A stretch of DNA of 64,000 nucleotides from Tubulanus polymorphus (taxonomy: Eukaryota; Animalia; Nemertea), in contig NC_134034.1 of NCBI RefSeq assembly GCF_964204645.1, positions 12,784,962 through 12,848,961 of the forward strand. Direction: 5' to 3'. Below the pieces are notes generated by a model. That model ran no database searches. It was not told the DNA's origin and saw nothing but the letters and a program-made list of their open reading frames with translations. Made by a program: the position numbers and the translations under genes. Positions 12,130-32,300 of the stretch are shown here, in pieces. Every line of letters begins with the position of its first letter. Position 1 is the stretch's first letter.

Positions 12130-14833
12130 TTCCGACTAACGGACATTCGGTTTCGTTTAGTTCGACTATAGTCTCGACTAACTCAGATAACCGAAAGTGG
12201 CCCTGGGTTCGTGAAAATGATTCACGGGCCGGCCGCGAAAAGCAGTTAATTTTATAGCAAGGCAGTGAAATGGGGGTGTTACTAAAAACATGCGCTACTA
12301 AAACGAAGACCTATGCACTTTGGGGTATTAGAACTATGCATGACTAAAAAGAAGTCAGAAGATACTCGAAATCATCACTTGAGGCGCTCTGTACCACCTC
12401 TGTCGGAAACGTTAATTGCCTGGTCGGTTTTCTCGGGTGCATATAGTTTTCGTTTTTAGTAGTGCTTCGTTTTAGTAACACTTGTTGAAACGAATGACAA
12501 ATTTCAAAATCAATCATATTTATTCTCATACAACAATTATACAAAATACCAGGTTTGTGCTCGAGGAATTATAATGTAAGCTCCTCAAACACGTGGACTT
12601 TCAAAAACAATTAGTCCAACCACCATAGGCGTATAAACTATAAACGAGAGTTTATACGCCCATGGTCCAACCATAGACTCTAAAACAGAAAAGTCTATGG
12701 CCCAACCATGGACTCTTAAACTGTAAAAGTCCATGGCTCCCCGCACTAAAACCAGAGATAAACCTGGCCAAATACTCTGGAAAGCGTAGGATTAAGTAAT
12801 CTGATTTACATTCTTACATCATTTTATTTTCACATCATATTATTAACTTTTAGCTTATTTTCTCAAATTCTAATAGTAATTTTATTTCTATTACTATGTA
12901 TGAAATTGTACTAACTTAAAACAAAGTTACATGTTAGGTATTTAGAAGTCTTTATCTACGATACATTTCCACTGCAGCTGATTTATACAATTTACATCGA
13001 TAGGAAAATGACAAAAATACACAAAGAATTATAAACTTTGATCCATAAAAAAAATTGGACTTGTCTGAAAGTCTAAGATTATGAATTTGACAATTCATGA
13101 GGTCAATGTAACCGACACTTTGTTATATTTCATGAAATATGAATCTATCATCGTCAACTTTTCAAATGACATCGATTGAGGACATCTCATTTATCAACAA
13201 AAAGCTCAACTTTATTCGATAGGACCTTAATAAATCAATGTTTTATGAACAATTGACATGAACATGTCATTTTATCTCCACAACAACAATTATACCTAAA
13301 TGACAGGTAATGATGTACTGGAGGAAGTGCGTCAGCCATTTACAAAAACGTGACCTGTATTTCAAAAAAAATCTCCAACATAAAAACATTATAACCGGAG
13401 ATAAAACCTCAAATTCAATCTGGAAAGCGTAAGATATGATTTAATTTTCATTAAAATTATTTTACAAGATAGCTAGTTTTGCCACCTTTGCCTTGTCTTT
13501 AAGAGGTTTCAAGACATTATCAAATTGGTTATTTTCTCAAATGTTACATTTAATGCAAAGTATTTTGGAGGTATTCTCTTCTATGCATTCAGCAAGAGTA
13601 TATGAATCGAGTATATAAATATTGTTCAACTTCCAATTTGAATAGAGCTAGGGCAATTACTAATAACTAATGGCTTTGCTACAAATAAGTTAAGATTCAA
13701 TAACTAACTTTTTGAGGTGCTTCTTGTGCAGATATTTCAGTACCCATGTAGACATCGATAAACCATGGTTTTAGTCCATAGCTAGCATAATCTACTGATT
13801 AATACTGTTCATATATCCTCATTTATCAAGAGACTGCTCCTCTATTTTGCTACTCTATTTTCCATAAGGGCCTTAATGAAAATAGTATTTTATGAAGCAT
13901 TGATGAGCACCACAGTATGAATGACGAAACATGTATATCATTTTATTCTTACACAACAATTATACCCCGCTAAATGAGTTATTTAAAAAAACAGTTCAAC
14001 ATAAAACCTACAAATTCGCTCACTCTGGAAAGCGTAAGGTAAACTAACTAATCTTAGTTACTACAAGAAAACTAAAAACATTGTCAAAAATTTCCTCGTC
14101 GTAGAGATTTCTTTCATTTTCAACTAGCTCATTTCACAAATGTTACATTTGAAACAAAGCAGGGTCTGATTTAAGCACTAGTCCAATTGCCCGGGACAAG
14201 TAATTTTCATTAGGGCATGTAGGTTATCACAATCACTCGTCCACCGGGCTTGTGTAATTCTATATCTCAAAGCTTTTATCCCACTCGATGTAAGGGAAGA
14301 TTGTGCAAGTTGATTTTTGAGGGGGGCAGTGATATTACATATGCCTGTCCCAAGGTCAAGTGGCATTTATTCCTTAGATCAAACCCTGCAAACTATCTAT
14401 TATAAAGGTTTTTCTTCGTGATAATTTAAGATAAATCGAGTATTTTCATATAAATATGGTTTGACTGACGAAGCTACGGCAACTTCTTAATTTGTATTAT
14501 TCAACTTGACAGTAGATATTAATACAACTCTATATAAAGATCAGAAATTCTTCTTAACCAGATATTACAGGCCCCACACAGACGTGGTTAAACTGATAAT
14601 CTAAACAAAGCTAGGACAATTGACCAATTAGCACTGTATCCTGGAGTTAGCCTATCAAGAAACTGCTCCTTCTATTCTATGTTCCCGCTAATTAAATCAG
14701 TATTTTATGAACCACTGAAAAGCACCACAGTGAAATTGTTGCTATAGAAATTAACAACTAAAAAGTTTCAACATGAATGATGAAAATGTACATCGTTTTA
14801 TTCACACAATAATATCTTAAACGAGGAATCATT

Positions 14834-15148
14834 CAGGCGCGGATCTAGGGAGGGGGCCCGGGCCCCACTCCTTCTTTTAAGTGAAGGTCGCAAAAATTAA
14901 TCCCTTTGTTTTAGTTTATCAGCAGCAGAAAAGGGGAAGTATTATTCATGAATTCTTGCCTCAGAATGTAGGAAATGGCCCCAAAACAGAGTTAAATTTC
15001 AAAAAATTTCTGACCCCCGCAGGGGCTTCGCGCCCGAGGCGCAAAGCGTAGGAACGTCTCGCGCCTACGACACTCGTTGCCAATAAAGTATCATCATAGC
15101 TACATTTATTAGGTGCCCCCCCTAAATTGGGCTCTAGATCCGCCCCTG
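14834..15148. mobile_element. Non-autonomous DNA transposon with hAT-like termini and 5-bp TSD TCATT
   Basis: Termini CAGGCGCGGATCTAG / CTAGATCCGCCCCTG with TCATT on both sides. A related element at ~35857-36155 is interrupted by a family-A MITE. Confidence 0.7.
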
Positions 15149-17199
15149 TCATTATGCAAGTTTCTAATTTCCAAACATGCGTTATGTATTACGATAACAG
15201 TCTCCAACATAGAGCATTAAAACTAGAGATGGAACACACAGATTCACTCTGGAAATCTAAGTATCCACTAATCATTACTTTCAAAACTAGAAACCTAGAA
15301 AACTAGAATTTTGCCTACTTTGCCCTGACTTAAAGATGTCCAAGCACCTTGGCATTAAATACTAAGTATTCTGATGTTCTTTTCTGTCAGCTTCGAAAAC
15401 ATCAACATAATCATACAATCGGTAACTAATCAATAACATCAATAACTTAAGTTTATAGCTGTTTTACATTCTTTCTAAAAAGTAAAATGTATGTACCAGA
15501 TTTTAGATAGTAAGTCTACCCCAGTATAACGATCAACAGTCACAGCAGTGATTGAGCGCGGCTAGTTGAAAGGACGGGTCGATCTTTCATCACAGTTATT
15601 CAAAGCATTCTATCATATCAGTTATTTTCTTTAAGTGTGTTCGATTTAGTTAAGGTTTATGGTTATTTGTTTTGTTCATTACAATAACTGAGTCCGATAG
15701 AATGCTTTGAATAACAACAGAAAAGATCTCGGGTTTTCGCTATACTTAGGGAAGGTTGTTCGATAAATGAAGAACCTTGTTTATAAATATTTGAAAAAAT
15801 GCCTTTTCATGTAAATAGAATATTAATTTGTTGATGTTTCTATTGTTGTTTATTATTTTCATCTTTTTTTTAGTATTATCTATTTATGTATGTACTTGTA
15901 TTTTGTATTATTTTCTACTTATTATTTATTGGGTTTTTTTTATTTATTTTTTTATTAATTTATGTACTTGTAGTTTGTATTATGTATTATTTAAACTCCT
16001 CTATTTACAACTGCAGGCATTTTTTCACTGTAAAGTTTCTGGGCCCATTTTAGAAAAGCACTACCGATTCACTGCCACTCCTTGATAATCATTATACACC
16101 CAATTTGAAGCTAAGTGATTATTCACGAGAGCCATCTCGTGATATGGATTTACCCATTACAATAAAAGAAGTTCAAACAGCTATAAACAATGTTAAAACG
16201 TTAAAAATTAGTCCTAGCTATAACTTTATGCCTTGTTATTCTTAGCTTTACCTCTCAAATGTAAATAATGGTCTCCTTTCAAATAAAGCTTTTGATTTCA
16301 AATACATAGCTATGATCATCTAACAGATTGATGGAGGCTCAAAGTTAAAACTCGATGTGAAAATCGACATATACGATTCAATTGTGAAATCAGTTACATG
16401 GGCCTTCGAAAATATATATCCATCAAATAAATACATCTACAATTCAGCAAATACTTAATATTTGTACATCAAACACTGGCCTAACGTTATGTTCTATGTT
16501 TCCTAACTATGTGATACCTACACGGACAAATAGCCATAGTTGACTATGTTTAACTATGGTAAAGTTTAAAGATTAAACTCACAATATATCTCAGCTTAGG
16601 AGTTAACTCAACAGACCTGCAGCCCAAACAAGGCGCTCGACGCGACCATTTACCCCTAGTGACTAACCTAACTTGACTTCTCTATCGACCAAGGATCGAA
16701 TACCAATATCGTGAATTAATGGAGCTTCGCTTTTATTACTCTCACATTGCATTAAACATTATGAAATAATTTCCTTGAAAACACTATATCAGACTGGTTT
16801 GAGAAAGGGTGATCAGTAAAAAAATCAATACTTTACGACAGAAATCCGCTGTTGTCTTTGCCGCTCCTGGATCTCAGTGTTTATAAAGATGCACTATTGT
16901 TTATGCTGCTCCTAATAAGATACACTATTGTCTTTGCTGCTTTTAAAACAGTGCTTATCCTGAATCGGTGTTTATGAGATAATCCATGAGCTTTGTCGCT
17001 CGAATCAGTGTTTATAAGATTCACTATAGTCTCTGCTGCTCCTGATAAAATATTTTATAGAAATCAACAACTGTTTGTAGAAGAATCCATCGTTGAGTGA
17101 TTAATCCGTTGATGGCTCCTCAACTTCTAATCTGGGCTTCTGCAGTTTTCATCAGCAAATGGGTCAATCAGTATTCATCTACTTGTAGATTTTCTGATG

Positions 17200-20100
17200 A
17201 GTAGTTGATCTCAAGCTGGGTTTTTTCTCATAGTTGATATTAAGCTGCAATAATTAAAAGAAGATATCCTGTAATGACCAAATATTTCAATAAGAATTAA
17301 TCGTAATAATTTCATGTATATCAAGTTACCTTTTATGATTGCTGGGTTTGTTATCGGCGATTATCTTATTAGTTGATTGGTTAATGAGTTCGATCCTAGT
17401 TGGCTGTGCACCGTTCAAGTTGGTCGATTTTGGACGAGTAGTTGTTCTCAAACTTGGTTTTTTTCGCATAGTTGAAATTTAGCTGCAATGATCAAAAGAA
17501 GATATCCTTTAATGACAAAATATTTCAATAAGAATTAATCGTAATAATTCCTTGAATATCAAGTTACCTTTTATGATTGCTGGTTTCATTATCAGCGATT
17601 AACTTATTAGTTGATTGGTAAATGAGTTCGATTCTGTTGGCCTCATCTGTGCGCCGTTCAAGTTGGTCGATTTTGGACGAGTAGTTGATCTCAAGCTGGG
17701 TTTTTTCTGATAGTTGAAATTTAGCTGCAATGATTAAAAGAAGATATCCTGTAATGACAAAATATTTCAATAAGAATTAATCATAATAATTCCATGTATA
17801 TCAAGTTACCTTTTATGATTGCTTGGTTTGTTATCGGCGTGGATCATCTAAAGTTTATGGGTTAATGAGTTCGATTCTGTTGGCCCCATCTGTGCGCTGT
17901 TCAAGTTGGTCGATTTTGGACGAGTAGTTGATCTCAAACTGGGTTTTTCCGCATAGTTGAAATTTAGCTGCAATGATTAAAAGAAGATATCCTGTAATGA
18001 CAAAATATTTCAATAAGAATTAATCGTAATCATTCCATGTATATCAAGTTACCTTTTATGATTGCTGGTTTCATTATCGGCGATTATCTTATTAGTTGAT
18101 TGGTTAATGAGTTCGATCCTAGTTGGCTGTGCGCCGTTCAAGTTGGTCGATTTTGGACGAGTAGTTGATCTCAAACTGGGTTTCTTCTTATAGTTGAAAT
18201 TTAGCTGCAATGATTAAAAGAAGATATCCTTTAATGACAAAATATTTCAATAAGAATTAATCGTAATAATTCCATGTATATCAAGTTACCTTTTATGATG
18301 GCTGGTTTCATTATCGGTGTGGATCATCAAAAGTTGGTGGGTTAATGAGTTCGATTCTGTTGGCCTCATCTGTGCGCTGTTCAAGTTGGTCGATTTTGGA
18401 CGAGTAGTTGTTCTCAAACTGGGTTTTTTCGCATAGTTGAAATTTAGCTGCAATGATCAAAAGAAGATATTCTGTATTGACAAAATATTTCAATAAGAAT
18501 TAATCGTAATAATTCCATGTATATCAAGTTACCTTTTATGATTGCTGGTTTCATTATCGGCGATTATCTTGTTGATTGGTTAATGAGTTCGATCGTAGTT
18601 GGCTGTGCGCTGTTCAAGTTGGTCGATTTTGGACGAGTAGTTGATCTCAAGCTGGGTTTTTTCTTATAGTTGAAATTTAGCTGCAATGATTAAAAGAAGA
18701 TATTCTGTAATGACAAAATATTTCAATAAGAATTAATCGTAATAATTTCATGTATATCAAGTTACCTTTTATGATTGCTGGTTTCATTATCGGCGATTAT
18801 CTTATTAGTTGATTGGTTAATGAGTTCGATCCTAGTTGGCTGTTCGCTGTTCCAGTTGGTCGATTTTGGACGAGTAGTTGATCTCAAACTGGGTTTTTCC
18901 GCATAGTTGAAATTTAGCTGCAATGATTAAAAGAAGATATCCTGTAATGACAAAATATTTCAATAAGAATTAATCGTAATAATTCCATGTATATCAAGTT
19001 ACCTTTTATGACTGCTGGGTTCATTATCGGTGTGGATCATCAAAAGTTGGTGGGTTAATGAGTCCGATTCTGTTGGCCTCATCTGTGCGCTGTTCAAGTT
19101 GGTCGATTTTGGACGAGTAGTTGTTCTCAAACTGGGTTTTTTGGCATAGTTGAAATTTAGCTGCAATGATCAAAATAAGATATTCTGTATTGACAAAATA
19201 TTTCAATAAGAATTAATCGTAATAATTCCATGCATATCAAGTTACCTTTTATGATGGCTGGTTTCATTATCGGCGATTATCTTGTTGATTGGTTAATGAG
19301 TTCGATCGTAGTTGGCTGTGCGCTGTTCAAGTTGGTCGATTTTGGACAAGTAGTTGATCTCAAGCTGGGTTTTTTCTTATAGTTGAAATTTAGCTGCAAT
19401 GATCAAAAGAAGATGTCCTTTAATGACAAAATATTTCAATAAGAATTAATCGTAATAATTCCATGTATATCAAGTTACCTTTTATGATTGCTTGGTTCGT
19501 TATCGGCGTGGATCATCTAACGTTTGTGGGTTAATGAGTTCGATTCTGTTGGCCTCATCTGTGCGCTGTTCAAGTTGGTCGATTTTGGACGAGTAGTTGT
19601 TCTCAAACTGGGTTTTTTCTTATAGTTGAAATTTAGCTGCAATGATTAAAAGAAGATATCCTGTAATGACAAAATATTTCAATAAGAATTAATCGTAATA
19701 ATTTCATGTATATCAAGTTACCTTTTATGATTGCTGGTTTCATTATCAGCGATTATCTTATTAGTTGATTGGTTAATGAGTTCGATTCTGTCGGCCCCAT
19801 CTGTGCGCTGTTCAAGTTGGTCGATTTTGGACAAGTAGTTGTTCTCAAACTGGGTTTTTTCGCATAGTTGAAATTTAGCTGCAATGATCAAAAGAAGATG
19901 TCCTTTAATGACAAAATATTTCAATAAGAATTAATCGTAATAATTTCATGTATATCAAGTTACCTTTTATGATTGCTGGTTTCATTATCAGCGATTATCT
20001 TATTAGTTGATTGGTTAATGAGTTCGATTCTGTTGGCCCCATATGTGCGCCGTTCAAGTTGGTCGATTTTGGTCGAGTAGTTGTTCTCAAACTTGGTTTT

Positions 20101-20345
20101 TCCGCATAGTTGAAATTTAGCTGCAATGATTAAAAGAAGATATCCTGTAATGACAAAATATTTCAATAAGAATTAATCGTAATAATTTCATGTTTATCAA
20201 GTTACCTTTTATGATTACTTGGTTTGTTATCGGTGTGGATCATCTAAAGTTGGTGGGTTAATGAGTTCGATTCTGTTGGCCTCATCTGTGCGCTGTTCAA
20301 GTAAGTCGATTTTGGGCGATAGTATACTAAGTTACCTTTTCTGAT
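17200..20345. repeat. ~233-243-bp tandem satellite, ~13 copies, two interleaved variants
   Basis: CAAGTTACCTTTTATGA recurs at about 17322, 17560, 17802, 18045, 18282, 18525, 18758, 18996, 19238, 19471, 19714, 19956 and 20198. The repeated MKYFV... ORFs are one per monomer. Confidence 0.97.
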
Positions 20346-20384
20346 TGCCGGGTTCATTATCGGTGAGGTCTCCTAAGTTTGTAG

Positions 20385-20605
20385 TCTAATTTTACATATC
20401 TTTTGTTGTTTTTTCTGTGTAAATAGTCCGAAAGTTTACAATGTTTGAATTTTGTCTAATTTTACATTTCTTTGCTCTTTTTTTCGTGTAAATAGTCCGA
20501 AAGTTTACAAGGTTTAAGAGAATTTTGTCTAAGTTTTACATATCTTTGGTCTTTTTTTTCATGTAAATAGTCCGAAAGTTTACAAGGTCGTAATTTTGTC
20601 TAATT
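20385..20605. repeat. ~68-bp tandem repeat, 3 copies
   Basis: GTAAATAGTCCGAAAGTTTACAA...TTTTGTCTAA three times. Confidence 0.85.
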
Positions 20606-23600
20606 TAAATTTTTTTTGTAGTTTTAAGTTTTTTCAAAATCGGAAATCGAAGTACAGATATAGTTGTGTGATCGGCGGTCGATTTCACATAGATTTCTTT
20701 TTCTTTAAATCCGAGGAGCGCATAATTGGGAAATTCGGTTCCAGTTTATTCAATTAATCTTCCAACCAGTCTGAACCGGCAAGCGACTGATTGGGGTCAA
20801 TTAAGTTGACTGCCTATTTTAATACATCGAGATTTGGAATATCTATATTACAAGGTTGAAGATCATTTTTTACATTTTATGAATAGTTGATTACTGGGTA
20901 GTAGTATAGCTGAAAAAAAAAGAGCAGAATCTTGTGAGCAGAAAATCCTTTCGAATATCACTGATCATAATTAACGTGTCAATTCATATGTATATAAGAT
21001 CAGCAATGTGGACCGGTACGTAGATTTTGATAATAGTCAATTATTAAACAATATCTATATGAAATTCAACTCATATCGTAATTCATCTATATTTTAGATA
21101 TCTAAGCAACGGTTGATTGTTATAGTTTAAAAACAATTCGACTAAAGCATCTTTAGTCATCTCTAGGAATACCAGAGTCACAACAAATTTAGTAATGCAT
21201 AATAAATCTTATCAAATTGTTTTTGTACTGTTTCTATCTTCAGAGATTCTTGATGTTTTTCTTTCTTGGGTGCTAAACACTCAGTGACCAGTAGGCTTTT
21301 ACTGAAACCCAGGCCCATCCTACTAAGTGCAAACCTGCTAGTAATAATGCCCTAAATACATTTCAATTGTCAGTTAAACCTTGTTCGTATTATCAAATTA
21401 ACTTCATCGTCAATTAATAAACTTTAAGAGATTTGTTTTCTACCCATAGGTGGTGACATCTGTGCCCAGTGAATGTTATTCTAATCCATTCCAGTAATTC
21501 TAAATATCGCTCCTAATATATACAATGATCTTGTAATTATGATGATATAACTAACTGTGCGCTGCCAGCATTGATCCTGGTCAACATGGTTCTACAGATT
21601 TAAGAAACCTTGAATCATTCCAACGCCTTGACAAATCCAGAATTCTGCAAAGCCTTAAAAGATTCAATAAATCCCACGCCTAAGAGACAGAGTTTAAACA
21701 CACCCTGTTTTTTTTAGATATCAACCAATTAGATTAAACAGTTTTCTTATCAACCCCTACGGTTTAGATTTGAGCACTTTTACCTTATATGAAGATGCTG
21801 AATTAATCTTTATCTTAGATGCCTAATCACCCAATTAATTTCCTAGCTATAATTAAAATTGTCTCTTAAAATTTTATACGGGGCTTGATATTTCTACATG
21901 ACAAGAATTTCAGATCTGGTTTCGATTGATCACTATTTCAAAATGCTTATTTTGCATAAGAGCTTTTGATATCTAGTTTGACGAATACAGAATTCCCCAA
22001 AACCTAACTGATTCAACAGATCCCACACACATGTCGCCCAGTTATGACGCAGGTGACATTGCACGATACAGTCGTCTCATCCACTGCACTATTATTTAAA
22101 TAATTTTCACTTATATATATTACATTGAATTAATTTTAATTAATCTTCTAGATATCTAAGTGATCTGTTAATTAGTGATCATACTAGCTACATTTTAAGT
22201 GGTAAATTAGAAATTCCCTTAAAGCCGAATTGCTATATAATCTTTATTTCCCTTTTATAGTAGTACACTGTGTATAAGGACCGAAAGACCTTGTTATAAC
22301 CGGACCTCCCTGGTGCGGTGCAAGACATTATGCTAGAAAATAGTTTGAAGGAGAGGGGTTAGTAAAAGAGAGCTATTAGCAAGAGGAATAAGACCTAAGT
22401 TTAGGATATCCTGTCAGAATAAGGCTCTCAATCTGATATACACAGTGAAATTGAAATATTCTCCCTTCCAAATTCAGGAATGTATTTGTGCACGTACAGA
22501 TTTGTTTTATCTCCCTTCGATCGGAAGTAAATCAGCGTGAAATGATTTTGGCAATAGGCCTATGTATCAAAACTAATACAGCTGTATTTAGATATCATAT
22601 AGTAATACATTTATGAGTAATTCACCTTTGATTCTAATTGTCAGTTAAACAATATCTATTATGCGTAACTTGACACACAGTATGGCTTTTAGATGAATCA
22701 GTTAGGTTTAGGTAAATTTTGGCAATTGTGAAGGACATGACCAGTTGCCATAAGCACGGCAGTTGGAGATGTAAATACTGATCAGTCGATGAGACTGATT
22801 CAGATGTGCTTATACATATATCAGCTATATTTAAATTTTCAATTTTACTACATTTATATTATGGACCTGTATTACATACCGGATAAAAAGTTTTTGATCT
22901 TAGAAATATTGAATTCATCTTTATTGTGGATCTAAGCCATTGGTTAATGAGCAATTTTTCCTAGCTTTAAATGATAATTGTCAGTTAAATAATAATCATA
23001 GCGCAAAACAAGGCACAGAGTGTGGCTTTCGGGAATGATTTGAACCGCTTAAAGCTTTGTTTTATTCTAGATTTGTCAAAGCGCTGAGACCTAATCACAG
23101 TTTCTGAAAGACCCGCAGTCCATAGTTTTCCCCATATATATTACACCAGATCTCGATAGAGCCCTAGACACTATTTTATACATCTTTCCCCCAGAAATTC
23201 ATTAATGCAATGGGTAAAGCAGCACATAATATACACTGTAAAGTGCCTGAATGTTTATAAATGACATATGTATCAATATATCATTTGTAAAAAAATCTAT
23301 CAACTGACGATAAAGTTTAATTGATATATATCTTTACAAGTAAAGCCAGCCTTAATGTATATGGGCCCCTAAAATATCTACACCAGAAGAATTTTTCATC
23401 AAGCATTATAAGATATTGAATGATTGCTAATATCTAAGCGATTAGTTAATTAGTAAATTGTCCTATCTATATCTTGATTGTCAGTTAAACAATAGTCATA
23501 TGAGGCCTGAAATATCTACGGTACATTCGAAAAATTTCAAATGTCACATAAGATATTGAATTTACCTTAATTTTACATTACTTACAAAATCTTTTAATCA

Positions 23601-24194
23601 ATAACTGACCAATCTACATTTTAATTACGAGACCAAAGAATATTTAAAGGACGTCACTCAATCATTTCGTCTAATATTCTAAATATTCAAGCAATCATTG
23701 CCTAGCTATATTTCAATTTACTACCGGCCACAGAGCTTCAATAAAGTAGTGCGGAGATGGTGAGCTTGACCAGCGTCTCTATCCTCTCCAGCGCCTATGC
23801 ATTCTAACCCAGATATGAAGAATCAACTTAGCTTTATGTCTGTATGCATTCCTGTTGCCATGCAGGATGAGGTCAAGACTGCCAGGTTCGGTTGCGGCAG
23901 GTCTTTGGTGGTCCTTCAAGGTGGAGTCTTTTGTGGGCACTTCTGGTGGGCAGATTTTAGATGGGCCTTTCCGGATTAACCTGAAATGAGTAAAAGAACA
24001 ATATTCTGTAGTTACACAATCCTTTTCGTATCACTCATCGTAATTTACATGTGTATCAACTTAACTTTCAATATTGCTGAATTCAGTGTTCTTTTTTTCG
24101 GCATCCTCTTCGTTGTAGTCGCCTTCAGCATCTTCTTCTTCATCTTGGGAGTCCTGAAATTAAAAAAAAGAGAAGAGCGATGAAAACCTGGTAC

Positions 24195-24432
24195 GGAACA
24201 AAACTAATGTTCGAAAGCTTTACAGCTCTCCGTCGCCGGTCACATGCCCAGAACACCAGACAAAGAGCCAGCCAGGAATATACTGCCCTCTACACGCCCT
24301 CACACAGAACGCGAAAACCAGGATGACAACGCCTCACATTCCCCATCTAACTGCAGGATGTACTGGGCGACGTCAGTAACTGACACACCTGTAAAATTGC
24401 ACGAAACACAAATAGTGCAGTACAACCAGCTT
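24195..24432 (+). mobile_element. Second, inverted copy of the same LINE fragment (left arm of inverted repeat)
   Basis: Aligns nearly gap-free to the reverse complement of 24735-24970; shared blocks include GGAACAAAACTAATGT and CTGCCCTCTACACGCCCTCA. Confidence 0.75.
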
Positions 24433-24734
24433 GACCGGGTTGAGATTCAGGATCTCAACTAGCACCCAAAAGCGTGACAAGAGACTTCATCCACTGACCG
24501 AGGTTATCACAAGGACACAATGAAACTAGCACTCACAAGCCGACGAGAGACTTCATCCACTGACCGAGGTTATCACAAGGACACAATGAAAACTAGCACT
24601 CAAACTAGAAATCAAAGAGCGTGACAGTAGAATCATCCCTCAGCCGACTCAGAATACCAGAAACAAAGAGCGTGACAGTAGAATCATCCCCCATCCGGGT
24701 GGTCGCAAGGACACAATGAATGCTAGTAGCGTGA

Positions 24735-24970
24735 CAATCCAGTATAACCGCTCCATTTGTTTCCCGCGCAATCCCACAGATATGCCCGTCATTGACATCA
24801 CTCAGCACACTTTGTAGATAGGTGGGGGCAGTGAGGCCTCGTCATCCTAGTTTTCGTGTTCCGTATGAGGGCGTGTAGAGGGCAGAATTTCCTGACCGAC
24901 TCTTTGTCTGACATCCTCGACACATGACCGGCGAAGGAGAGCTGACGCTTTCGGACATTAGTTTTGTTCC
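24735..24970 (-). mobile_element. Degraded 3' fragment of an RTE-type non-LTR retrotransposon ORF (right arm of inverted repeat)
   Basis: With two frameshifts it translates to VRKRQLSFAGHVSRMSDKESVRKF-ALYTPSYGTRKLG-RP, matching the post-RT C-terminal signature of RTE-like LINEs (R.rL.faGH..R....E.......P..G.R..GRP). Confidence 0.6.
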
Positions 24971-26765
24971 AGCAAACGTTGAAATTCGACAGAGAAATCG
25001 GCCCTGAAAAATAAAACGGGTTAGAACCTGGAAAAAAGAACGGATTAATAAACACGGAACAGTACAGGACAGTACGAAGACGAACAGTAACACATAAAAC
25101 ATGAAGACGTCGTTCCTCAGGAAGCAGGAACAGGAGCGGGAGCAGGAGCGCAGCGAAGATCGCCAGGAGGAGAATCCACGGTAGCATGTTCACAGTGTGA
25201 GTGTGCAGAGGTGAATGAGGCCTATGCTTGTGTACACGTGGTCAGCCGGTGACGTATTCAATAGCGCGTGTCAGAATGATATCAACAACTCTGAAAAACC
25301 GCAATTGTGTCTCTCTATCGTTGAATGGGTTTACATTATGAAAGGTTCCACCGCCGGGTTGAATACACGCCAGTAGTCAGCTGAACAATATAGTGGAGGT
25401 ACTGAATAAAGGTCATGAAATAAATTACTTGATTCCCAACAGCTACCTCCGAATTTATTAGCCGCCGCCTGTTTTTTTCCTGCTAGAATATTCTGGAAAA
25501 ATTTATAAATTTATACCGACCGATAGCTCTTCAGTTAAAGATTCACACCAACACAGGTCTTCATTAGAATCCGCGTAAACATTTACTAATGAAATTAGTT
25601 TATTAGTCATGCACCCCGAGATAACTAACTCACACCATGCACGAGGAAAGCGGTCTATTTGAGTCATTGGGGAAAACCCACTAATTAGTGGTATTAATAC
25701 CATGTATTCATGATTAATCATCATTCATGCTGTTATCACAGAATCCCGTCAATCGACAGATTTATAAAAACTCCTTGATTCAATTGAGGGGAGACAGGTT
25801 TTTTAATTACTTGGAGCACCGATCCTCTGAAATTCCAGGTCGAAATTCTCAAAAACTTCATGCTAATTATCACTCATAATTTGAAAAAAAACCAAATTGT
25901 TTTCTTTAATTTCGATACTGAATTAAACGCCGTACATCATCATGTAAATTTAGGAAAGTCCATATTAGAATTTCGTTTCTTGTTCCAATCTACTCTTATC
26001 CCATTTTTGATTTTGGTCAAAGAGTATGGCGGAATCAAATCATGTGTACAGGGCACCGTAACAACGACTGCTATTCAGCAGACTACCTTGACGGGTGAAG
26101 ATGGATTGTCCATCAATAATGAGAAGGGGAAGTAAATTCGAGGTCCTGCCAGTAATCCGCGTCCGGTCCATGACTCCGTATGTCAATTCAAAAAAACATC
26201 AAGACTTTATTGCCACAAAACAATATTCGTAAATAAAGTTTTTCGGTCAGGAAGAATTGAGTGAGTGGGTTTTTTGATAGCAACTTAAATACTTAAATCA
26301 CGGAATTAACCACCTGGCTCAAAGTGTACTGTCTGTCAACACCCCGGCCCCTTCTTAGCCCCTGCCGGCGAACTCGGCTGCTGGGGCTGCGGCCAAGGGG
26401 CGCAGAGCAGAGGGGTGGCTGGGGAGGGATGGATCTGGTCGGTGCCGAGAATCTATGGTGGTTCCCTTCTTTTCGCAAACCCAGCGTTAGGCTACACGCC
26501 CGGGCGGGTGGGTCCGCGACACATAAGGCGCCCCGTCAGTCAGTGCGCGGGCCAGAGATCAACACGTGCGATCATAGACTATAGTCTGAATACCTGTCAT
26601 TGTAACCTGTTCCCTCTCTGTGGGAATTTGGAAGGATGGCTAGGTACTATCTCATTCAATACCTGCGCTAGTTAGTTACGTAATCATTGGTGGTGAGCTT
26701 TTTATAATCGGATGAGCTTATACCAACGTTAGGGATGACAACCGGGCCAAAACACGGTTGAAAAA

Positions 26766-28910
26766 AGTAACACTTCAAAAATATACTTTCTGTTCACTTC
26801 AGTCCACAGTCTTAATTCATTCACTACGACCACTTCGATTTCATCCGTTTGAATTGTTCATATATTTGTAGTGGATTATTACGTAAAAGGAGAAGTGAAG
26901 GAACTGGAGGAGGAGGAGACGGCGGGACTGCCCGGGTTAAACACGACCACAAACACTATTCATATGTATGTGAAATACGGCTCTAAAATACGTAACCTAA
27001 TAGCGTATTCACTCAATAGAATGAAGGTCAGCGATCGGATTATAATAATCTGTTAATCCGTCCGCATCGCGGGATAATCCGTCTTAATCCTCTCTGATTT
27101 AAACGCGTTTTTGTTTCTAGGAAACCGATGTCGCTCAAATCACGTGGAACGGAATCGGAAAATCTGTCGCTAAAACGATAAACTGTGCTGAGATTCTCGC
27201 TGATAAACTGAAGGTGCGTTTACCCGGGAGACCGCGTCCTGCTGGACCGCGCAGCCTGGAAGCACTAGGGGAGGGGGGAGGGGTCAGTGCAATTGTGTAC
27301 TGTAATGCTTAATGTATATGAAAGAATGGCCGATTTTGCGTACAGAGGGCGAGGGGGGGTTGAAAAATTCAAATTTTATGCGTATGTAATAAATGAATGA
27401 TCCCTTAAATAGAGATTGCCCTCTTATTTGGTTGGTATAGGTTTGTATTGATTCGGTGTCCTTTGCAAACCGGCAACCTGCTAGGAGTGAAAAAGAGGGT
27501 TTGATTTTGAAATCGGAAATCAAAGTACAGATATAGTTGTGTGATCGGTGGTCCAGTTCGGCATAATTTTTAACTTAAACCCAGGAGCCAGTTGCATAGT
27601 CGTGGCTCAAGTCTTGTCTTGAATCTTAAGACTGGTCTTAAGTTGTAAGATTGGCTATAGAACTAAGTTGGTCTTAGACTGGTCTTAAGTCTAAGCCATG
27701 ACTTTGCAACCGGCCCCTGGGACTAACTCTTGTCCCTCAAGTTAAAGTTAATACTGGAGTCTATAAAAGCTGGTCCTTGGTTTTGAAGTTAAAACTGGTG
27801 CTTTTTAACTTCTCGAATCCGATTCAATATTCTATTTCTATTTTCAGTTGCATCAAGTCCGAAAATTCAAAGTTTTGAGGTAAAAATTCGAACAGTTCGA
27901 AAATCTCATCAAATTCGGGCACATTTTTCGCGAATAATTCAAACGATATTTTGTGTATTTGAAGGATTGAAGAATATTGGGAGCCGACGATAGAAGGCTT
28001 GGATCGACTAAAGGTGAATCGAGATATTCCAGCAGTAACTATACTCCTCACTAAAATACAACTTACTCCCGAACAAAAAAGGTATTTCATCCGATTAAAC
28101 CGAGTTTAAGTACGAGCCTAAACTCTGGAATATGTAAGAATATTCGATTTTAAATTGCGCAGGGCTGGAGACAGTGACACGTTCGAGGAGTGGTGGATGA
28201 ATCGACTTCACGAGGCTCGTTTAATACGCAGACAATTAGCCGGAGATATCGTCGACGACAACGAACAACAATCAATCGTCGCTACGGAAACTAAAACTAA
28301 AAATACCCGACATCGAAAAGATTCCTCGACGAATAATAGACAATCGGCAAAAAATAAACATTCCGATCGGACTATAGATGGCGCTACTCGTTTGGATCGA
28401 GGAGACTCGAACGTTGAAGGCGATAGTGATAGAACGTTGAATACCGCGGAGGACGGGAGTAGAGTGGGGGACCAGAGCAGGGGGGAGCAGGGCTGGGGGG
28501 AGCAGGGCTGGGGGGAACAGGGCAGGGGAGATCGGGGTAGAGGTGGCCAAGGTAAAGGAGGGGAGCACGGGAGAGGGAGGGGTCAAACAGGCCTATCTCG
28601 TAGGGGAGGTCCAGGCAGCAGGGGAGGGAGAGGTCCAGGCAGTAGGGGTGGGGGTGGTCCAGGCAGTAGGGGAGGGGGAGGTTCAGCCAGTAGGGGAGGG
28701 GAAGGTCCAGGCAGCAGGGGAGGGAGAGGTCCACGCAATAGGGGTGGAGGTGGTCCAGGCAGTAGGGGAGGGGGAGGTTCAGCCAGTAGGGGAGGGGAAG
28801 GTCCAGGCAGCAGGGGAAGAAGAGGTCCACACAGTAGGGGTGGGACTGGTCCAGGCCGCAGGGGAGGGGGAGGTTCGGGTAGTAGGGAAGAGAGTGGTGG
28901 AATGGGATGA
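26766..28910 (+). CDS. RPP25L: Ribonuclease P/MRP subunit p25-like (Alba domain) protein with RGG-rich C-terminal tail
   Basis: Exons: 26766 (A of ATG), 26872-27026, 27121-27213, 27848-27879, 27965-28081, 28163-28910; phases consistent. The translation contains Rpp25-family motifs MYVKYGSKIRNLIAYSL, ITWNGIGKSVAKTINCAEIL, LHQ and EEYWEPTIEGLDRLKVNRDIPAVTILL. AATAAA at 29004-29009. Confidence 0.9.
27268..27405. mobile_element. MITE-like dispersed repeat; inverted copy at 29692-29822
   Basis: TTTTGCGTACAGAGGG.GAGGGGGGTTGAAAAATTCAAATTTTATGCGTA occurs here and reverse-complemented at 29705-29760. Confidence 0.75.
27584..27716. mobile_element. MITE family B (Harbinger-like); other copies 55973-56110, degenerate ~6730-6900
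   Basis: TIR GCCAGTTGCATAGTC.TGGCT / AGCCATGACTTTGCAACCGGC; the interior is the reverse complement of the 55973-56110 copy; CWG flanks. Confidence 0.8.
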
Positions 28911-29306: not shown

Positions 29307-32300
29307 TCATAATTTGACCACTAGGTGGACATTTTTTGGGATCCACCAATCTGCGGTTTTTTCGCACGGTAAATCGAGGTGCATTATGGGATCACTACCG
29401 TTGGAATCGTTTAAATAAACGGGGCATTGTAACGTTTCTATGGTATCAGTGGTTACCACGGTTTCTGATTGAGTCGTATCTATCGGTTTCAACCAAACGA
29501 TCGGCATCCGTTGAGAAATGTGACGTCTGCTGTCGTCGTCGTGGTGATCGGTAAGAGTTGAATTCGTAGAATCCCACGAGGCGTGTCTGACGAGTAGGTC
29601 CGGGAGGTAAACGCCACACGGTGGAGGGCGGCTCGGCTCGTCACTGTTAAACGGCAAAAACTATCAAATATAAAAAAATACAATACAGGATTAGGGATCA
29701 TTTATTGCGTACGCATAAAATTTGAATTTTTCAACCCCCCCTCCCCCTCTGTACGCAAAATTGGACATTTTTTCATATACACTAAGCATTACAGTACGCA
29801 ATTGCACCGACCCCTCCCCTAATGTGTACGTAATAAGTACAGGGCTGCCAACCTCTGAAAACTGCTATCAGTAACAAATTGAATTTTTTTCAGTAACATT
29901 TCATTGAAATATGAAAGAAAATGTTCATATCAATCAGTAATCAACAGCAAGACCCCCAGCTTTCATATTTCTGTGATGCATCAAACAAATCGAATCAGTA
30001 TTTTTCATTATAAAAGAGTAACAAATACTGAAAATCAGGAACTGTTGTCAGCGCTGAGAGTAGCCTGCGTACACGAGGTGGAGCTGCTTTAGATAATGAG
30101 CGCCCTCTATAGTAATACCTGTTGAACTAGTTTGAGATTGTGTACGTCACAGTAATGAGTAACAGCGTGGTGTTGTAAGATAGTCTGTATAAACTGCTCC
30201 GGTCGATTGAAAACCGGTAATCTGTACAGAACGATAGAATCCGTCTGCTCGATGTAACTCTTCATCGTCTGTCGTCTGCTCGCTATCAGATTCAACCAAT
30301 CCGTCAACGTTTCCCCGGTAACCGAGCTATCCCGTTGCCACGCCGACGGTATGGTATTTGTCGATATAGAACGCCACATTTCAACGAGTTGCGGAGTTAG
30401 TGCACCGTCGCCACGGATACCGCTAATAATCGATTCTAAATCGGCCTGCAGTCGATTCTGTTGCCGTTGGAAACGTTCGACTTCGTGATGGAAGAATATT
30501 TCCATCGGGTTGAAAGCGAGGCTGTTTGTCGCCGGTAGCGATGGTAATTTTAGAACGGACTGTAAGTGATGCTCGAGTATTCGTATGTTAGCTGAATGAG
30601 GCTGAACGGTCTCACCTCCACCTCCGCTCTCAACATCGTTTACAACACCTTCAACTGTCAGTAAATCATCAATCAAACACCTACAACATTAATCACACAC
30701 ATTCTTTAATATCAGACACCCACAATGTACATAGATAATATTCGCTGCTGGACTGGAACAAACTGGGTTCAGAACTATGGAACTGGCTGCCGAACTGTGG
30801 AACTGGGTCTGAACTGTGCAACTAGGTTCAGAACTGCGGAACTGGCTGCCGAGTTAAAGAACTGGGTCTGAACTGTGGAACTGGATTCAGAACTGTGGAA
30901 CTGGCTCAGCTGCCGAGTTGTGGAACTGGGTCTGAACTGTGGAACTAGGTTCAGAACTGCGGAACTGGCTGCCGAGTTATAGAACTGGGTCTGAACTGTG
31001 GAACTGGATTCAGAACTGTGGAACCGGCTGCCGAGTTATAGAACTGGGTCTGAACTGTGGAACTGGGTTCAGAATTGTGGAAGTGGGACCAGAACTATGT
31101 ATCTGGACCCAGAACTTGGGAACTGGAACCAGAACCGTGAAACTGGATTCAGAACTGTGGAACTGGGTCCAGAACTGCGGAACTGGGTTCAGAACTGTGC
31201 AACTAGGTTCAGAACTGTAGAACTTGGTTCAGAACTGTATAGAACTGGATCATGTAAGCAATAAATACACCCGCAATGTATACTGTACAAACCTGCTGTT
31301 AGCAGCCGTGTGTAACGAATCGACCAATGAATGAGCACCTAACATTTGACCAGTCACAGACGACAGCTCATCCAGTTTATTGATTATTACGTCTTTACGT
31401 TCGTGATCTAAAGCTAACCACAACGAGGTCATATCATTCTTACCAAACGACGCCTAGAAATTAAAATACATTTATTACACGCATAATCAACCGTAATCAG
31501 TGTCTCCGGGTTTTAATCCGGGTTTAAATTACCTGGTTATGATCGGATTTAAACACGACGTTCAGTAATAACTGTAACAGCGAGTCGACGCCGCAGCGAT
31601 CAGCCTTGTTCTGACACAGTCCGCCGTACGTCGCCGTGACGATCGTTTTCAGCCCGAAACACGTCTGCTCCCTCGTCATCACCGTTAGCAACGCGTTTAA
31701 ACTCGTCTCGATCTCTTTATACGTCCAGCCAGGCGTCTGCTCATATATGGCGCTAGCGCCCGTGTAGTTCTGACGATGTACGAGAACGGAATGTAACAAT
31801 ACAAGCAGTTTCTTCAGCCAATCAGCGTCGCTCAACTGTAAATATATTTCACCAAATTCTTCAAAGGTTTCGGACTCAATCTTTATAATCGGCCAAACTT
31901 GGTATTCCACCCAAATCCCTGGGGCTGCAGTTGCTCAAAAGTCGGTTAAAGTTAATCAGTGAATAGTTGACAATTGAAAGTTCATTGTTACCGTGGTATT
32001 TATCCGCCAGTTACCGGTATCTTTAACCAACTTATCAGCAACTGGCCCTATATTACTCAAATTTAGTTAATTTGCGATTAAAATATTATGTTCAGTCATC
32101 GGAGCGGGCGACTGCAAGCTTCGACCAATTTCTGTCCACGGTCTGCAATGCTCTGCGGGGACAGGTGGTTGTAATAATCTCCTAACAGATGCTGAATATA
32201 TTTCAGGTAGGAGATGCGGTGTCTACCGGGACGTCGTTTACCAACCCTCCTCCCTGACTCCTCAAACCGTTAAAGATGCGTACGTCAAGTTTGAATACTA

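What the first reader, a model, noticed from the sequence alone, without database searches (positions are those of the whole stretch)
24195..24970. Candidate hairpin-RNA (endo-siRNA precursor) locus: inverted LINE fragment with strand-biased G:U-preserving divergence
Seen: 24195-24432 (+) and 24735-24970 (-) are an inverted pair of ~235 bp with only two small indels, separated by a ~300-bp loop of short tandem repeats. My manual alignment gives about 30 transitions with C/A in the left arm against T/G in the reverse-complemented right arm, about 9 in the opposite direction, and about 10 transversions. The majority class turns Watson-Crick pairs into G:U wobbles only in a minus-strand transcript; on the plus strand they would be A-C mismatches. 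Both arms translate as a broken RTE-type LINE C-terminus (RQLSFAGHVSR...GTRKLG-RP). Known: Drosophila hpRNA loci are long inverted repeats rich in G:U pairs that are diced into endo-siRNAs against selfish elements. Inference: a captured retrotransposon fragment has been kept as a long RNA stem, possibly an anti-LINE small-RNA source. Alternatives are strand-biased mutation or a retro-copied A-to-I-edited duplex.
Basis: partly seen in the sequence, partly recalled or inferred. Interest (0 to 1): 0.82.

Follow-up and report, generated by a model that had tools for sequence, protein, structure and literature searches.

The report
Multicopy G:U-rich long RNA hairpin module
The inverted repeat and its strand-specific G:U bias are real, but this is not a one-off locus: it is one of about 146 near-identical copies of the best-conserved part of a gene-like repeat in a ribbon-worm genome, probably kept as a long RNA hairpin whose job, small-RNA source or otherwise, is still unproven.

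Summary
Observation confirmed. The arms 24195-24432 and 24735-24970 pair over 224 well-aligned columns. Arm differences are 30 minus-strand wobble-compatible transitions, 9 incompatible transitions and 10 transversions (p=0.001). The minus-strand RNA folds at -442 kcal/mol against -320 for the plus strand.

The locus is not unique. A 20-mer shared by both arms occurs 146 times forward and 146 times reverse in the genome, so there are about 146 hairpins and no solo arm or parent-LINE copies. The hairpin block (24157-25003) is 97-98% identical between copies, while its flanks are 88-93%. It sits between splice-acceptor-like motifs of a minus-strand, gene-like, mosaic repeat.

Among 30 copies, variants at Watson-Crick stem sites favour minus-strand G:U 30:12 (per-arm normalised OR 2.5, p=0.016). 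Loop and flanks are symmetric. All common polymorphisms at predicted pairs are WC/G:U swaps. True compensatory changes are almost absent.

The LINE origin rests on a motif only. No anti-LINE target was found. Nemerteans reportedly lack Dicer-2.

The scan found this family before on other DNA (s1-500207, s1-500200); my results agree and add the tests above.

Verdict: a probably selected sense-strand RNA hairpin module of a multicopy repeat. The endo-siRNA role is unproven.

The parts
24735..24974 (-).
   Evidence: Inverted-repeat blocks. Paired in the MFE and in the RNAalifold consensus of 27 copies. 97.1% mean pairwise identity among copies.
24433..24734 (-). On the minus strand it is G+U-rich and is predicted to extend the rod rather than stay open.
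   Evidence: TRF and the repeat finder. Plus-strand keto skew -0.24. Most conserved segment, 98.4% pairwise identity. Predicted pairs inside it carry WC/G:U polymorphisms. Its length varies between copies: arm-to-arm spacing is 499-606 bp, and L021, L028 and L029 are 230-270 bp longer.
24192..24432 (-).
   Evidence: 97.6% mean pairwise identity. Three other genomic copies are 100% identical over 238 nt.
24157..25003 (-). Whole conserved hairpin block, the unit that is 97-98% identical across about 146 copies
   Evidence: Sliding divergence from the majority is 0.3-2.9% inside the block and 3-13% outside. Boundaries are visible in the copy alignment. The best flank-only hit is 94%, against 99-100% for hairpin segments.
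25004..25020 (-). Upstream splice-acceptor-like motif (T-rich tract + CAG) directly 5' of the block on the minus strand. It is followed by a possible 26-nt micro-exon (25003-24978) and a GT two bases before the stem.
   Evidence: Read directly from the sequence. Splicing is inferred, not shown.
24154..24170 (-). Downstream splice-acceptor-like motif (T8 AATTTCAG), 36 nt after the end of the stem
   Evidence: Conserved in 29 of 30 copies; sequence.
24066..24153 (-). Exon-like acidic segment after the hairpin (DSQ[D/E]EEED...)
   Evidence: Conserved start and 3-nt indels, but frameshifts and stops between subfamilies. It is gene-like with weak coding evidence.
25085..25193 (-). Signal-peptide-like ORF start (MLPWILLLAIFAALLLPLLFLL) upstream of the hairpin on the minus strand
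   Evidence: the ORF listing. Part of the repeated flank. The exon end is not determined.
23978..25478 (-). Core shared by all sampled subfamilies of the repeat
   Evidence: BLAST of 29 other copies. Subfamily 2 has different but internally conserved flanks outside this core.
12500..26053 (.). Largest collinear repeat unit seen for this subfamily, including the 243-bp satellite at 17199-20323
   Evidence: Collinear matches to L032, L033 and L040 upstream, and to L034, L036 and L042 downstream. The ends are ambiguous, with no clear termini or target-site duplications.

Best explanation
The finding is one copy of a roughly 850-bp module (24157-25003) present about 146 times in a ribbon-worm genome. 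The module is always embedded in the same gene-like, mosaic interspersed repeat.

The module is most likely transcribed on the minus strand (inferred from splice-like motifs and exon-like flanks). Its RNA folds into a long, rod-like hairpin. The two arms are only 78% identical as DNA, but about 91% of stem positions pair in the minus-strand RNA, because 30 of the 50 arm differences are G:U wobbles.

The pattern is best explained by selection, acting on the lineages that gave rise to new copies, for RNA pairing on that strand. Wobble substitutions are tolerated. As a side benefit they break the DNA palindrome, which lowers cruciform instability and inverted-repeat-triggered silencing.

Individual daughter copies then decay almost neutrally.

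Shown: the structure, the bias, the copy number, the extra conservation, and the stem-specific wobble preference among copies.

Inferred: transcription, the strand, and selection.

What the double-stranded RNA does next is not known. It could be diced by the single Dicer into small RNAs for the retained siRNA-class Argonaute, or it could bring intron ends together. I rank 'dsRNA substrate for small-RNA production, acting on its own repeat family' first among the downstream roles, at about 25% absolute.
For: Structure and polarity: (30:9:10; -442 vs -320 kcal/mol; 204 vs 183 paired of 224).

Multicopy: at least 40 copies at 97-100%; the whole hairpin plus flanks is repeated in all 29 fetched loci, with arms still about 76% alike in each; exactly 146 forward and 146 reverse hits of a shared 20-mer, control 0.

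Extra conservation: pairwise identity 0.971-0.984 in the block against 0.88-0.93 in the flanks. This is not a sampling artefact, because flank-selected best hits reach only 94% while loop-selected hits reach 99%.

Lineage-level constraint: hairpin divergence plateaus near 2.3% while flank divergence rises to 9-12%. The hairpin/flank ratio is 0.25-0.5 for older pairs and about 0.7 (about 1.0 in two of four) for the youngest duplicates.

Stem-specific wobble preference among copies: 30:12 at WC sites (private 23:9, shared 7:3; p=0.008). Normalised per arm, Mantel-Haenszel OR 2.48, p=0.016. Controls: loop OR 1.22, flankL 1.52, flankR 1.04.

RNAalifold on 27 copies: 309 pairs, -424 kcal/mol. All 10 predicted pairs with a polymorphism in at least 5 copies are WC/G:U swaps, and broken pairs are nearly all singletons.

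Outer flanks lack the compositional skew, and their substitutions are strand-symmetric at 94:88.

Minus-strand sense: conserved T-rich/CAG motifs at both block edges, 3-nt indels in the exon-like flank, and a signal-peptide-like ORF.

Rationale for G:U: engineered G:U hpRNA transgenes keep the RNA stem while disrupting the DNA inverted repeat and avoid self-silencing (PMC9263138, listed; only its abstract was read).
Against: No RNA data of any kind: transcription, strand and processing are all inferred.

Classical covariation is almost absent, with 1 compensatory pair and a covariation term of -1.99 of -424 kcal/mol. The copies are too similar to provide it.

The wobble bias among copies is moderate (p about 0.01-0.02). 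It comes from 30 of about 146 copies, chosen by left-arm similarity.

One polymorphism present in 9 copies (24776) breaks a pair.

The central region is at least as conserved as the stem, so pairing of the two arms alone does not explain the conservation. Homogenisation by gene conversion would also give a divergence plateau and was not excluded.

The central region shares the plus-strand A+C skew of the left arm, which a regional strand-biased mutation process could also produce.

For the small-RNA reading specifically: nemerteans are reported to lack Dicer-2, a Notospermus library showed no endo-siRNA signature (PMC11114477), and no trans target outside the family was found.
Confidence: 0.6

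Rival explanations
1. Hairpin-RNA (hpRNA) family that is diced into endo-siRNAs. The minus-strand stem is cut, by the single Dicer in the absence of Dicer-2, into about 21-23-nt RNAs. These are loaded into the retained siRNA-class Argonaute and silence either a LINE or, more likely, the host repeat family itself.
For: The stem is about 224 bp with three uninterrupted paired runs of at least 21 bp on the minus strand (longest 29). Pairing appears constrained on that strand. Nemerteans keep a siRNA-class Argonaute whose ligands are unknown (PMC11114477). The G:U design matches what makes hpRNA transgenes stable (PMC9263138).
Against: There are no small-RNA data. Dicer-2 is reported absent in Trochozoa, and a nemertean library showed no endo-siRNA overlap signature. 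No parent LINE or other trans target was found: a 20-mer identical in both arms has 146+146 hits, all accounted for by hairpins, within 2 mismatches. The LINE identity of the arms is not supported by Pfam or the Atlas. Drosophila hpRNAs are one-to-few-copy loci, not 146 copies.
Confidence: 0.25
2. No RNA function. The G:U polarity is a frozen accident or the trace of an ancient strand-biased mutation process in the ancestor of the family. The block looks conserved because it is homogenised by gene conversion or spread recently.
For: The 30:9 asymmetry predates amplification. The overall substitution spectrum in the block after amplification is strand-symmetric at 50:45. The central region shares the left arm's A+C skew and is as conserved as the stem. 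The youngest duplicate pairs differ in hairpin and flanks at similar rates. Compensatory changes are nearly absent.
Against: When conditioned on pair state, stem WC sites show 30:12 (OR 2.48, p=0.016), whereas loop and flanks do not. All common polymorphisms at predicted pairs keep pairing through wobble. The overall symmetry arises because G:U sites can only revert (12 of 12 transitions there restore WC). The outer flanks, which would lie in the same transcription unit, show no skew. No empty sites were seen: every top flank hit on contigs C1-C5 has an adjacent hairpin. This argues against recent insertion of a separate mobile hairpin.
Confidence: 0.2
3. Retro-copied, ADAR-edited duplex. A minus-strand transcript with a perfect stem was hyper-edited A-to-I and reverse-transcribed, which fixed A-to-G changes that read as G:U.
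For: The polarity is the one expected for editing of a minus-strand transcript. Among variants at WC stem sites, minus-strand A>G outnumbers U>C 12:3.
Against: Six of the seven common wobble polymorphisms at WC-majority pairs are C/U, not A/G, on the minus strand. Private variants show an equal or larger excess of minus-strand C>U (18:9), which ADAR cannot make. The unit keeps intron-like parts and a 3-kb satellite, and can be 13.5 kb long with no tail or target-site duplication. That is unlike a retro-copy. The ancestral differences could not be polarised because no parent sequence was found.
Confidence: 0.07
4. Intron-architecture element. The hairpin is essentially the whole of an intron, from a GT two bases before the stem to an AG 36 nt after it. 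It acts to bring the splice sites together or to sequester them, with any small RNAs as a by-product (a giant tailed-mirtron-like arrangement).
For: The conserved block is bounded by acceptor-like motifs. There is a GT at 24977-24976 two bases before the stem, and a T-rich tract plus CAG 36 nt after it. Other notes of this scan describe micro-exon genes and splice-site-masking hairpins in this genome (s1-518630, s1-508769; not checked by me).
Against: There is no transcript evidence. A stem that only bridges splice sites would not need 98% sequence conservation over 850 nt, central region included. The exon-like flanks are frameshifted between subfamilies.
Confidence: 0.15

Closest known systems
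Drosophila hairpin-RNA (hpRNA) loci, e.g. hp-CG4068 and the D. simulans Nmy/Tmy suppressors (PMC10292708, PMC10317233, listed)
   Same: A long inverted repeat transcribed from one strand into a stem of several hundred base pairs. The arms derive from another genetic element. The evolutionary logic is silencing of selfish sequences.
   Different: Those are single or few-copy loci with identifiable trans targets and depend on Dicer-2/AGO2. Here there are about 146 dispersed copies, no target outside the family, a host phylum reported to lack Dicer-2, and no small-RNA evidence.
Engineered G:U hpRNA transgenes in plants (PMC9263138)
   Same: C-to-T type substitutions in one arm turn G-C pairs into G:U. 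The RNA stem survives while the DNA inverted repeat is disrupted. This matches what is seen here: 78% DNA identity against about 91% RNA pairing.
   Different: Those are artificial constructs in plants, and the benefit shown there is escape from inverted-repeat-induced DNA methylation. Whether any comparable DNA-level penalty exists in a nemertean is unknown.
Mirtrons and tailed mirtrons
   Same: An intron whose ends lie at or close to the base of a hairpin. Here a GT lies 2 nt before the stem and an AG lies 36 nt after it.
   Different: Mirtron hairpins are about 60-100 nt. This one is about 790 nt. Splicing here is only inferred.
Foldback elements / MITE-derived hairpin RNAs
   Same: A multicopy dispersed sequence with long inverted arms that would give dsRNA when read through.
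   Different: The inverted arms are not at the ends of a mobile unit. The hairpin is always internal to the same larger repeat. No target-site duplications or empty sites were seen, and the arms are 22% diverged in a polarised way instead of nearly identical.
Retrozymes / viroid-like rod-shaped RNAs encoded in animal genomes
   Same: Multicopy genomic units whose RNA folds into a long rod.
   Different: No hammerhead or other ribozyme was found: there are zero Rfam hits at gathering threshold in the whole window. The units are not arranged in tandem.

Membership tests
hpRNA / endo-siRNA precursor locus | Long inverted repeat able to form a stem of well over 100 bp in a single transcript | tested here: met
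   224 aligned stem positions, 204 paired on the minus strand; MFE -441.7 kcal/mol, z -24.
hpRNA / endo-siRNA precursor locus | Transcribed from the strand on which it folds | not testable with these tools
   No RNA-seq access. Exact-ORF look-ups in public assemblies found nothing. The strand is inferred from splice-like motifs only.
hpRNA / endo-siRNA precursor locus | Yields Dicer-dependent 21-23-nt small RNAs loaded into a siRNA-class Argonaute | not testable with these tools
   No small-RNA data. The literature reports that nemerteans have a siAGO but no Dicer-2, and that N. geniculatus shows no endo-siRNA signature (PMC11114477).
hpRNA / endo-siRNA precursor locus | A trans target homologous to the arms exists elsewhere in the genome | tested here: not met
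   A 20-mer identical in both arms, with up to 2 mismatches, gives 146 forward and 146 reverse hits. The listed hits mostly fall in inverted pairs about 583 bp apart, and the control is 0. The first-look candidate count for the arm is 315, about twice 146. Only one 20-mer was tested.
RTE-type LINE fragment | Significant similarity to a LINE ORF2 (RT or C-terminal domain) by a profile or sequence search | tested here: not met
   Pfam at E up to 10 gave no LINE family for four stop-free arm peptides. The best Atlas scores were 0.78-0.89 with no RT family. Only a motif resemblance (R.L.FAGHV.RM ... G.RK.G) recalled from memory remains. A read-through peptide across the stop or frameshift was not searched, because it has no reference.
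RTE-type LINE fragment | A parent or sister LINE copy in the same genome | tested here: not met
   tblastx of both arms against 184 kb of held DNA gave only arm-to-arm hits. The genome-wide 20-mer count leaves no solo copies. More diverged parents could not be looked for, because only the 40 best candidates are scored and no further genomic DNA could be fetched.
Foldback / MITE-type transposon | Inverted arms form the termini of the mobile unit, with target-site duplications and empty sites in paralogous flanks | tested here: not met
   The hairpin is always internal to homologous flanks. The conserved block extends about 30-40 nt beyond the arms to splice-like motifs. All top flank-only hits on C1-C5 have an adjacent hairpin.
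Retrozyme / ribozyme-bearing rod RNA | Hammerhead or other self-cleaving ribozyme | tested here: not met
   No Rfam family reaches its gathering score anywhere in the 64-kb window.
Structured RNA under selection (generic) | Compensatory (both-sides) substitutions at predicted pairs | tested here: inconclusive
   Only 1 of 309 pairs has a both-sides change. The copies are 98% identical, so power is low. One-sided WC/G:U changes are enriched: 30:12, OR 2.48, p=0.016.
Mirtron-like hairpin intron | Hairpin ends coincide with used splice sites | tested here: inconclusive
   A GT lies 2 nt before the stem, and a T-rich tract plus CAG lies 36 nt after it, conserved across copies. Use of these sites is unknown.

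The most novel reading that the evidence does not exclude
A family of about 146 splice-site-delimited, roughly 800-nt rod-like hairpin introns serves as the natural substrate of a non-canonical endo-siRNA pathway in nemerteans (single Dicer plus the orphan siRNA-class Argonaute). Its G:U-for-G-C substitutions are a naturally evolved way of keeping a long RNA stem while defusing the DNA palindrome. The small RNAs would police the host repeat family itself.
Probability: 0.15. Interest if true: 0.8.

Novelty: new variant of a known kind. Interest (0 to 1): 0.55.

Why it matters
Long endogenous hairpin RNAs are well understood only in Drosophila and plants. In spiralians, the endo-siRNA pathway is reported as partly lost, and the retained siRNA-class Argonaute of nemerteans has no known ligand.

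This family offers a concrete candidate to test with one small-RNA library. It has about 146 copies of a hairpin that is better conserved than everything around it, and its arms have diverged almost only in ways that keep pairing on one strand.

Whatever its function, it is a natural example of the G:U trick: the RNA stem is kept while the DNA palindrome is broken. Engineers arrived at the same trick independently for hairpin transgenes.

It is also a warning for genome scans. A striking 'single locus' may be one member of a repeat family.

Tried and rejected
1. Single-copy locus: rejected.

2. 5'-truncated retroelement with a fixed 3' end at 23978: this looked plausible and was rejected. The 'solo' copies are a second subfamily with its own conserved flanks.

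3. Transposon termini of the large unit: the ends near 12,500 and 26,053 are ambiguous, and no terminal repeats or target-site duplications were recognised.

4. Ongoing strand-biased mutation: the raw spectrum is symmetric in the block (50:45) and in the flanks (94:88). Only after conditioning on pair state does a stem-specific bias appear.

5. Parent LINE: none found in the window plus 42 loci. Pfam and the Atlas gave no support. A weak Tad5 hit (E 0.13) and a 0.78 Atlas row with DUF6451 in 13% of members are treated as noise.

6. Transcript evidence through exact-ORF look-ups: nothing on record for a plus-strand and a minus-strand ORF of the hairpin. The tool warns that records of the window's own genome may be left out, so this says nothing about expression.

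7. Rfam: no family in the window.

The sample therefore stayed at 30 short and 12 long loci, and no more copies could be added.

9. The count of structure pairs was not run, because it would have needed a typed 799-character structure string. fold_alignment and my own counts were used instead.

Exon-like pieces were only inspected one by one.

11. The contig is not human: earlier notes identify a ribbon worm, and the GalNAc-transferase and dynein exons are consistent with an invertebrate metazoan.
Full report
**1. The observation**

The repeat finder reports three collinear inverted blocks that together span 24195-24421 and 24747-24970. They are separated by two small indels. The spacer carries a 66-bp tandem repeat and a 51-bp repeat.

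A global alignment of the left arm with the reverse complement of the right arm gives three classes:
- 32 transitions with A or C on the left against G or T on the right;
- 9 transitions of the opposite class;
- 19 transversions, a count inflated by the poorly aligned inner ends.

On the 224 well-aligned columns of the family-majority sequence the counts are 30: 9: 10, with binomial p=0.001. For this copy, 32:9 gives p=4.3e-4.

In this copy the minus strand can form 174 Watson-Crick pairs plus 30 G:U pairs, with 20 mismatches. The plus strand forms 174 Watson-Crick pairs, 9 G:U pairs and 41 mismatches.

As RNA, 24190-24975 folds at -441.7 kcal/mol on the minus strand (z -24.1) and -320.3 kcal/mol on the plus strand (z -11.8).

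**2. It is not a single locus**

The left arm has at least 40 matches at 97-100% identity in the window's own 268-Mb genome, from 315 first-look candidates. In all 29 other loci fetched, the whole hairpin and 1.5-3.2 kb of flank are repeated. Within each copy the two arms are still only about 76% alike. The polarised divergence therefore arose once, before the family expanded.

A 20-mer that is identical in both arms, allowing two mismatches, occurs 146 times forward and 146 times reverse, with zero hits for the reversed control. The listed hits mostly fall in inverted pairs about 583 bp apart. So there are about 146 hairpins and essentially no solo arm-like sequences.

The copies lie on all twelve large contigs, and many are towards contig ends.

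Earlier notes of this scan identify the animal as a ribbon worm. They show that two other copies were already followed up:
- s1-500207, 340 kb upstream, which is my locus L005;
- s1-500200, 1.64 Mb upstream.

Their conclusion was about 150 copies forming the most conserved part of a gene-like interspersed repeat, with LINE origin and small RNAs not shown. I reached the same picture before reading them.

**3. The surroundings**

The core 23978-25478 is shared by all sampled copies. Outside it, at least two subfamilies have different flanks that are conserved within each subfamily. One subfamily, which includes this window, is collinear from about 12,500 to about 26,053. That stretch includes a 13-copy 243-bp satellite. 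I could not recognise transposon termini.

On the minus strand the hairpin block is bounded by two splice-acceptor-like motifs, each a T-rich tract followed by CAG:
- The upstream motif is followed by a possible 26-nt micro-exon and a GT two bases before the stem.
- The downstream motif lies 36 nt after the stem and is followed by an acidic exon-like segment. That segment has a conserved start and 3-nt indels, but it is frameshifted between subfamilies.

Further upstream lies a signal-peptide-like ORF start.

The unit is therefore gene-like with minus-strand sense, but its coding capacity is doubtful.

**4. The hairpin block is the best-conserved part**

| Segment | Mean pairwise identity among 30 copies |
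|---|---|
| Left arm | 0.976 |
| Central region | 0.984 |
| Right arm | 0.971 |
| Flanks | 0.88-0.93 |

This is not a consequence of having picked copies by left-arm similarity. When copies are picked by the right flank alone, the best non-self hit is 94%. When picked by the central region alone, they reach 99%.

Comparing all pairs of copies, hairpin divergence plateaus near 2.3% while flank divergence rises to 9-12%. In the four youngest duplicate pairs the two rates are similar, with a ratio of about 0.7 overall and about 1.0 in two pairs.

That is the pattern expected if the hairpin is held constant, or homogenised, in the lineages that give rise to new copies, while individual copies then decay nearly neutrally.

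**5. Is pairing itself constrained?**

Taken raw, substitutions among copies are strand-symmetric: 50:45 in the block and 94:88 in the flanks. But G:U sites can only revert. All 12 transitions there restore a Watson-Crick pair.

At Watson-Crick stem sites each pair offers one wobble-compatible and one incompatible transition. There, variants run 30:12 in favour of minus-strand G:U (private 23:9, shared 7:3; p=0.008).

Because the arms differ in composition and in sampled variability, I normalised per arm. The Mantel-Haenszel odds ratio is 2.48, p=0.016. The same contrast gives 1.22 in the central region, 1.52 in the left flank and 1.04 in the right flank, none significant.

RNAalifold on 27 copies predicts a rod of 309 pairs at -424 kcal/mol. 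In that consensus:
- The so-called loop is also mostly paired.
- All ten predicted pairs with a polymorphism in five or more copies are WC/G:U interchanges.
- Broken pairs are almost all singletons.
- Only one pair shows a true compensatory change, and the covariation term is negligible (-1.99).

One polymorphism present in nine copies (24776) breaks a pair of my arm map.

The evidence for RNA-level constraint is therefore real but moderate. It rests on one-sided changes in a sample of 30 copies.

**6. The alternatives**

*Strand-biased mutation.* The outer flanks, which would lie in the same transcription unit, have no keto skew (+0.005 and -0.06), whereas the left arm has -0.29. Their substitutions are also symmetric. 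However, the central region shares the skew (-0.24), so a regional process cannot be fully excluded.

*ADAR editing followed by retro-copying.* Six of the seven common wobble polymorphisms at WC-majority pairs are C/U rather than A/G on the minus strand. Private variants show a C>U excess (18:9) as well as an A>G excess (12:3). The unit looks nothing like a retro-copy.

*Independently mobile foldback element.* The hairpin always sits in the same flanks. Every top flank hit that I could check has a hairpin next to it.

*Gene conversion.* This remains open.

**7. The LINE and anti-LINE parts of the interpretation**

Both arms translate, with a frameshift and a stop, into peptides carrying R.L.FAGHV.RM and G.RK.G motifs. 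These resemble the C-terminal tail of many LINE ORF2 proteins. That resemblance is from memory, and no tool confirmed it:
- Pfam gave nothing relevant.
- The Atlas gave nothing meaningful.
- tblastx found no parent in 184 kb of held DNA.
- The genome-wide 20-mer count leaves no room for close relatives.

So no present-day LINE is in sight that small RNAs from this stem could target. The only sequences matching the arms are the family itself.

**8. What is known**

Drosophila hpRNAs are the closest functional analogue, but they are few-copy loci that depend on Dicer-2/AGO2 and have defined targets.

A survey of RNAi genes in Lophotrochozoa reports that nemerteans retain a siRNA-class Argonaute but lack Dicer-2. 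It also reports that a Notospermus geniculatus small-RNA library shows no endo-siRNA signature, and the authors leave open that the single Dicer could serve the orphan Argonaute (PMC11114477).

Work on plant transgenes shows that replacing G-C by G:U in a hairpin keeps the RNA stem, disrupts the DNA inverted repeat, and prevents self-silencing (PMC9263138, abstract). The same logic would explain why a long natural hairpin that must persist in 146 genomic copies has 78% DNA identity but about 91% RNA pairing.

**9. Verdict**

A minus-strand RNA hairpin under some constraint is the best reading (about 0.6). It is, however, a module of a multicopy gene-like repeat rather than a captured LINE fragment at one locus.

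Its proposed role as an anti-LINE endo-siRNA source has no support beyond geometry. About 0.25 is my estimate for any small-RNA precursor role.

It is a new variant of a known kind. The scan had already found it on other DNA.

**Limits**
- No RNA data.
- 30 of about 146 copies were sampled, chosen by left-arm similarity.
- No outgroup was available to polarise the arm differences.

Noticed in passing
window 17199-20323: A 243-bp satellite (13 copies, 89% matches) lies inside the large repeat unit. Diverged versions (72-92%) sit at the collinear position upstream of other hairpin copies (L031, L032, L033, L040).
   Followed up: partly
window 33263-34323; L034:51-362, L035:4572-5244, L036:1-323, L039:4556-4950: A 92-bp satellite (11.5 copies) lies about 7 kb beyond the end of the repeat unit in the window. 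It recurs at 93-96% identity a few kb beyond the hairpin unit in 4 of 7 other copies. The family may be embedded in an even larger recurrent neighbourhood.
   Followed up: no
whole window: The density of minisatellites is very high, with 33 TRF rows at score 200 or more and periods of 16-480 bp. One example is a 40-bp repeat of 42 copies at 58053-59741, which also matches L031 at about 80%.
   Followed up: no
L021:1491-2560, L028:1491-2514, L029:725-1748: Three copies have hairpin blocks 230-270 bp longer, because of a duplication in the central tandem-repeat region. Genome-wide arm-to-arm spacing varies from 499 to 606 bp. The central region thus changes length while keeping its sequence.
   Followed up: partly
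G000 contigs C1-C12 (coordinates): Hairpin copies seem concentrated in the outer few Mb of the large contigs, for example C1 at 0.2-8.5 Mb and 23-31 Mb of 32 Mb. This was judged by eye from the hit lists only.
   Followed up: no
window 2691-3287 (-), 30107-30676 (-), 39029-39511 (-): Ordinary host exons flank the repeat-rich middle of the window. One is a polypeptide GalNAc-transferase-like exon, and two look like exons of a dynein heavy chain. All were recognised by eye from the translations and not searched.
   Followed up: no
window 28155-28910 (+) and 28602-28887: A 251-aa ORF rich in G/R/S is built on 24-bp and 96-bp tandem repeats. All three overlapping frames are open, so it is probably a repeat artefact and not a gene.
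   Followed up: no
L034, L036, L042 just beyond the position matching window 26053: Three copies share a further stretch of about 40 nt that the window lacks, and they then diverge from each other. The window copy may be slightly truncated at this end, or another element may abut the unit there.
   Followed up: no
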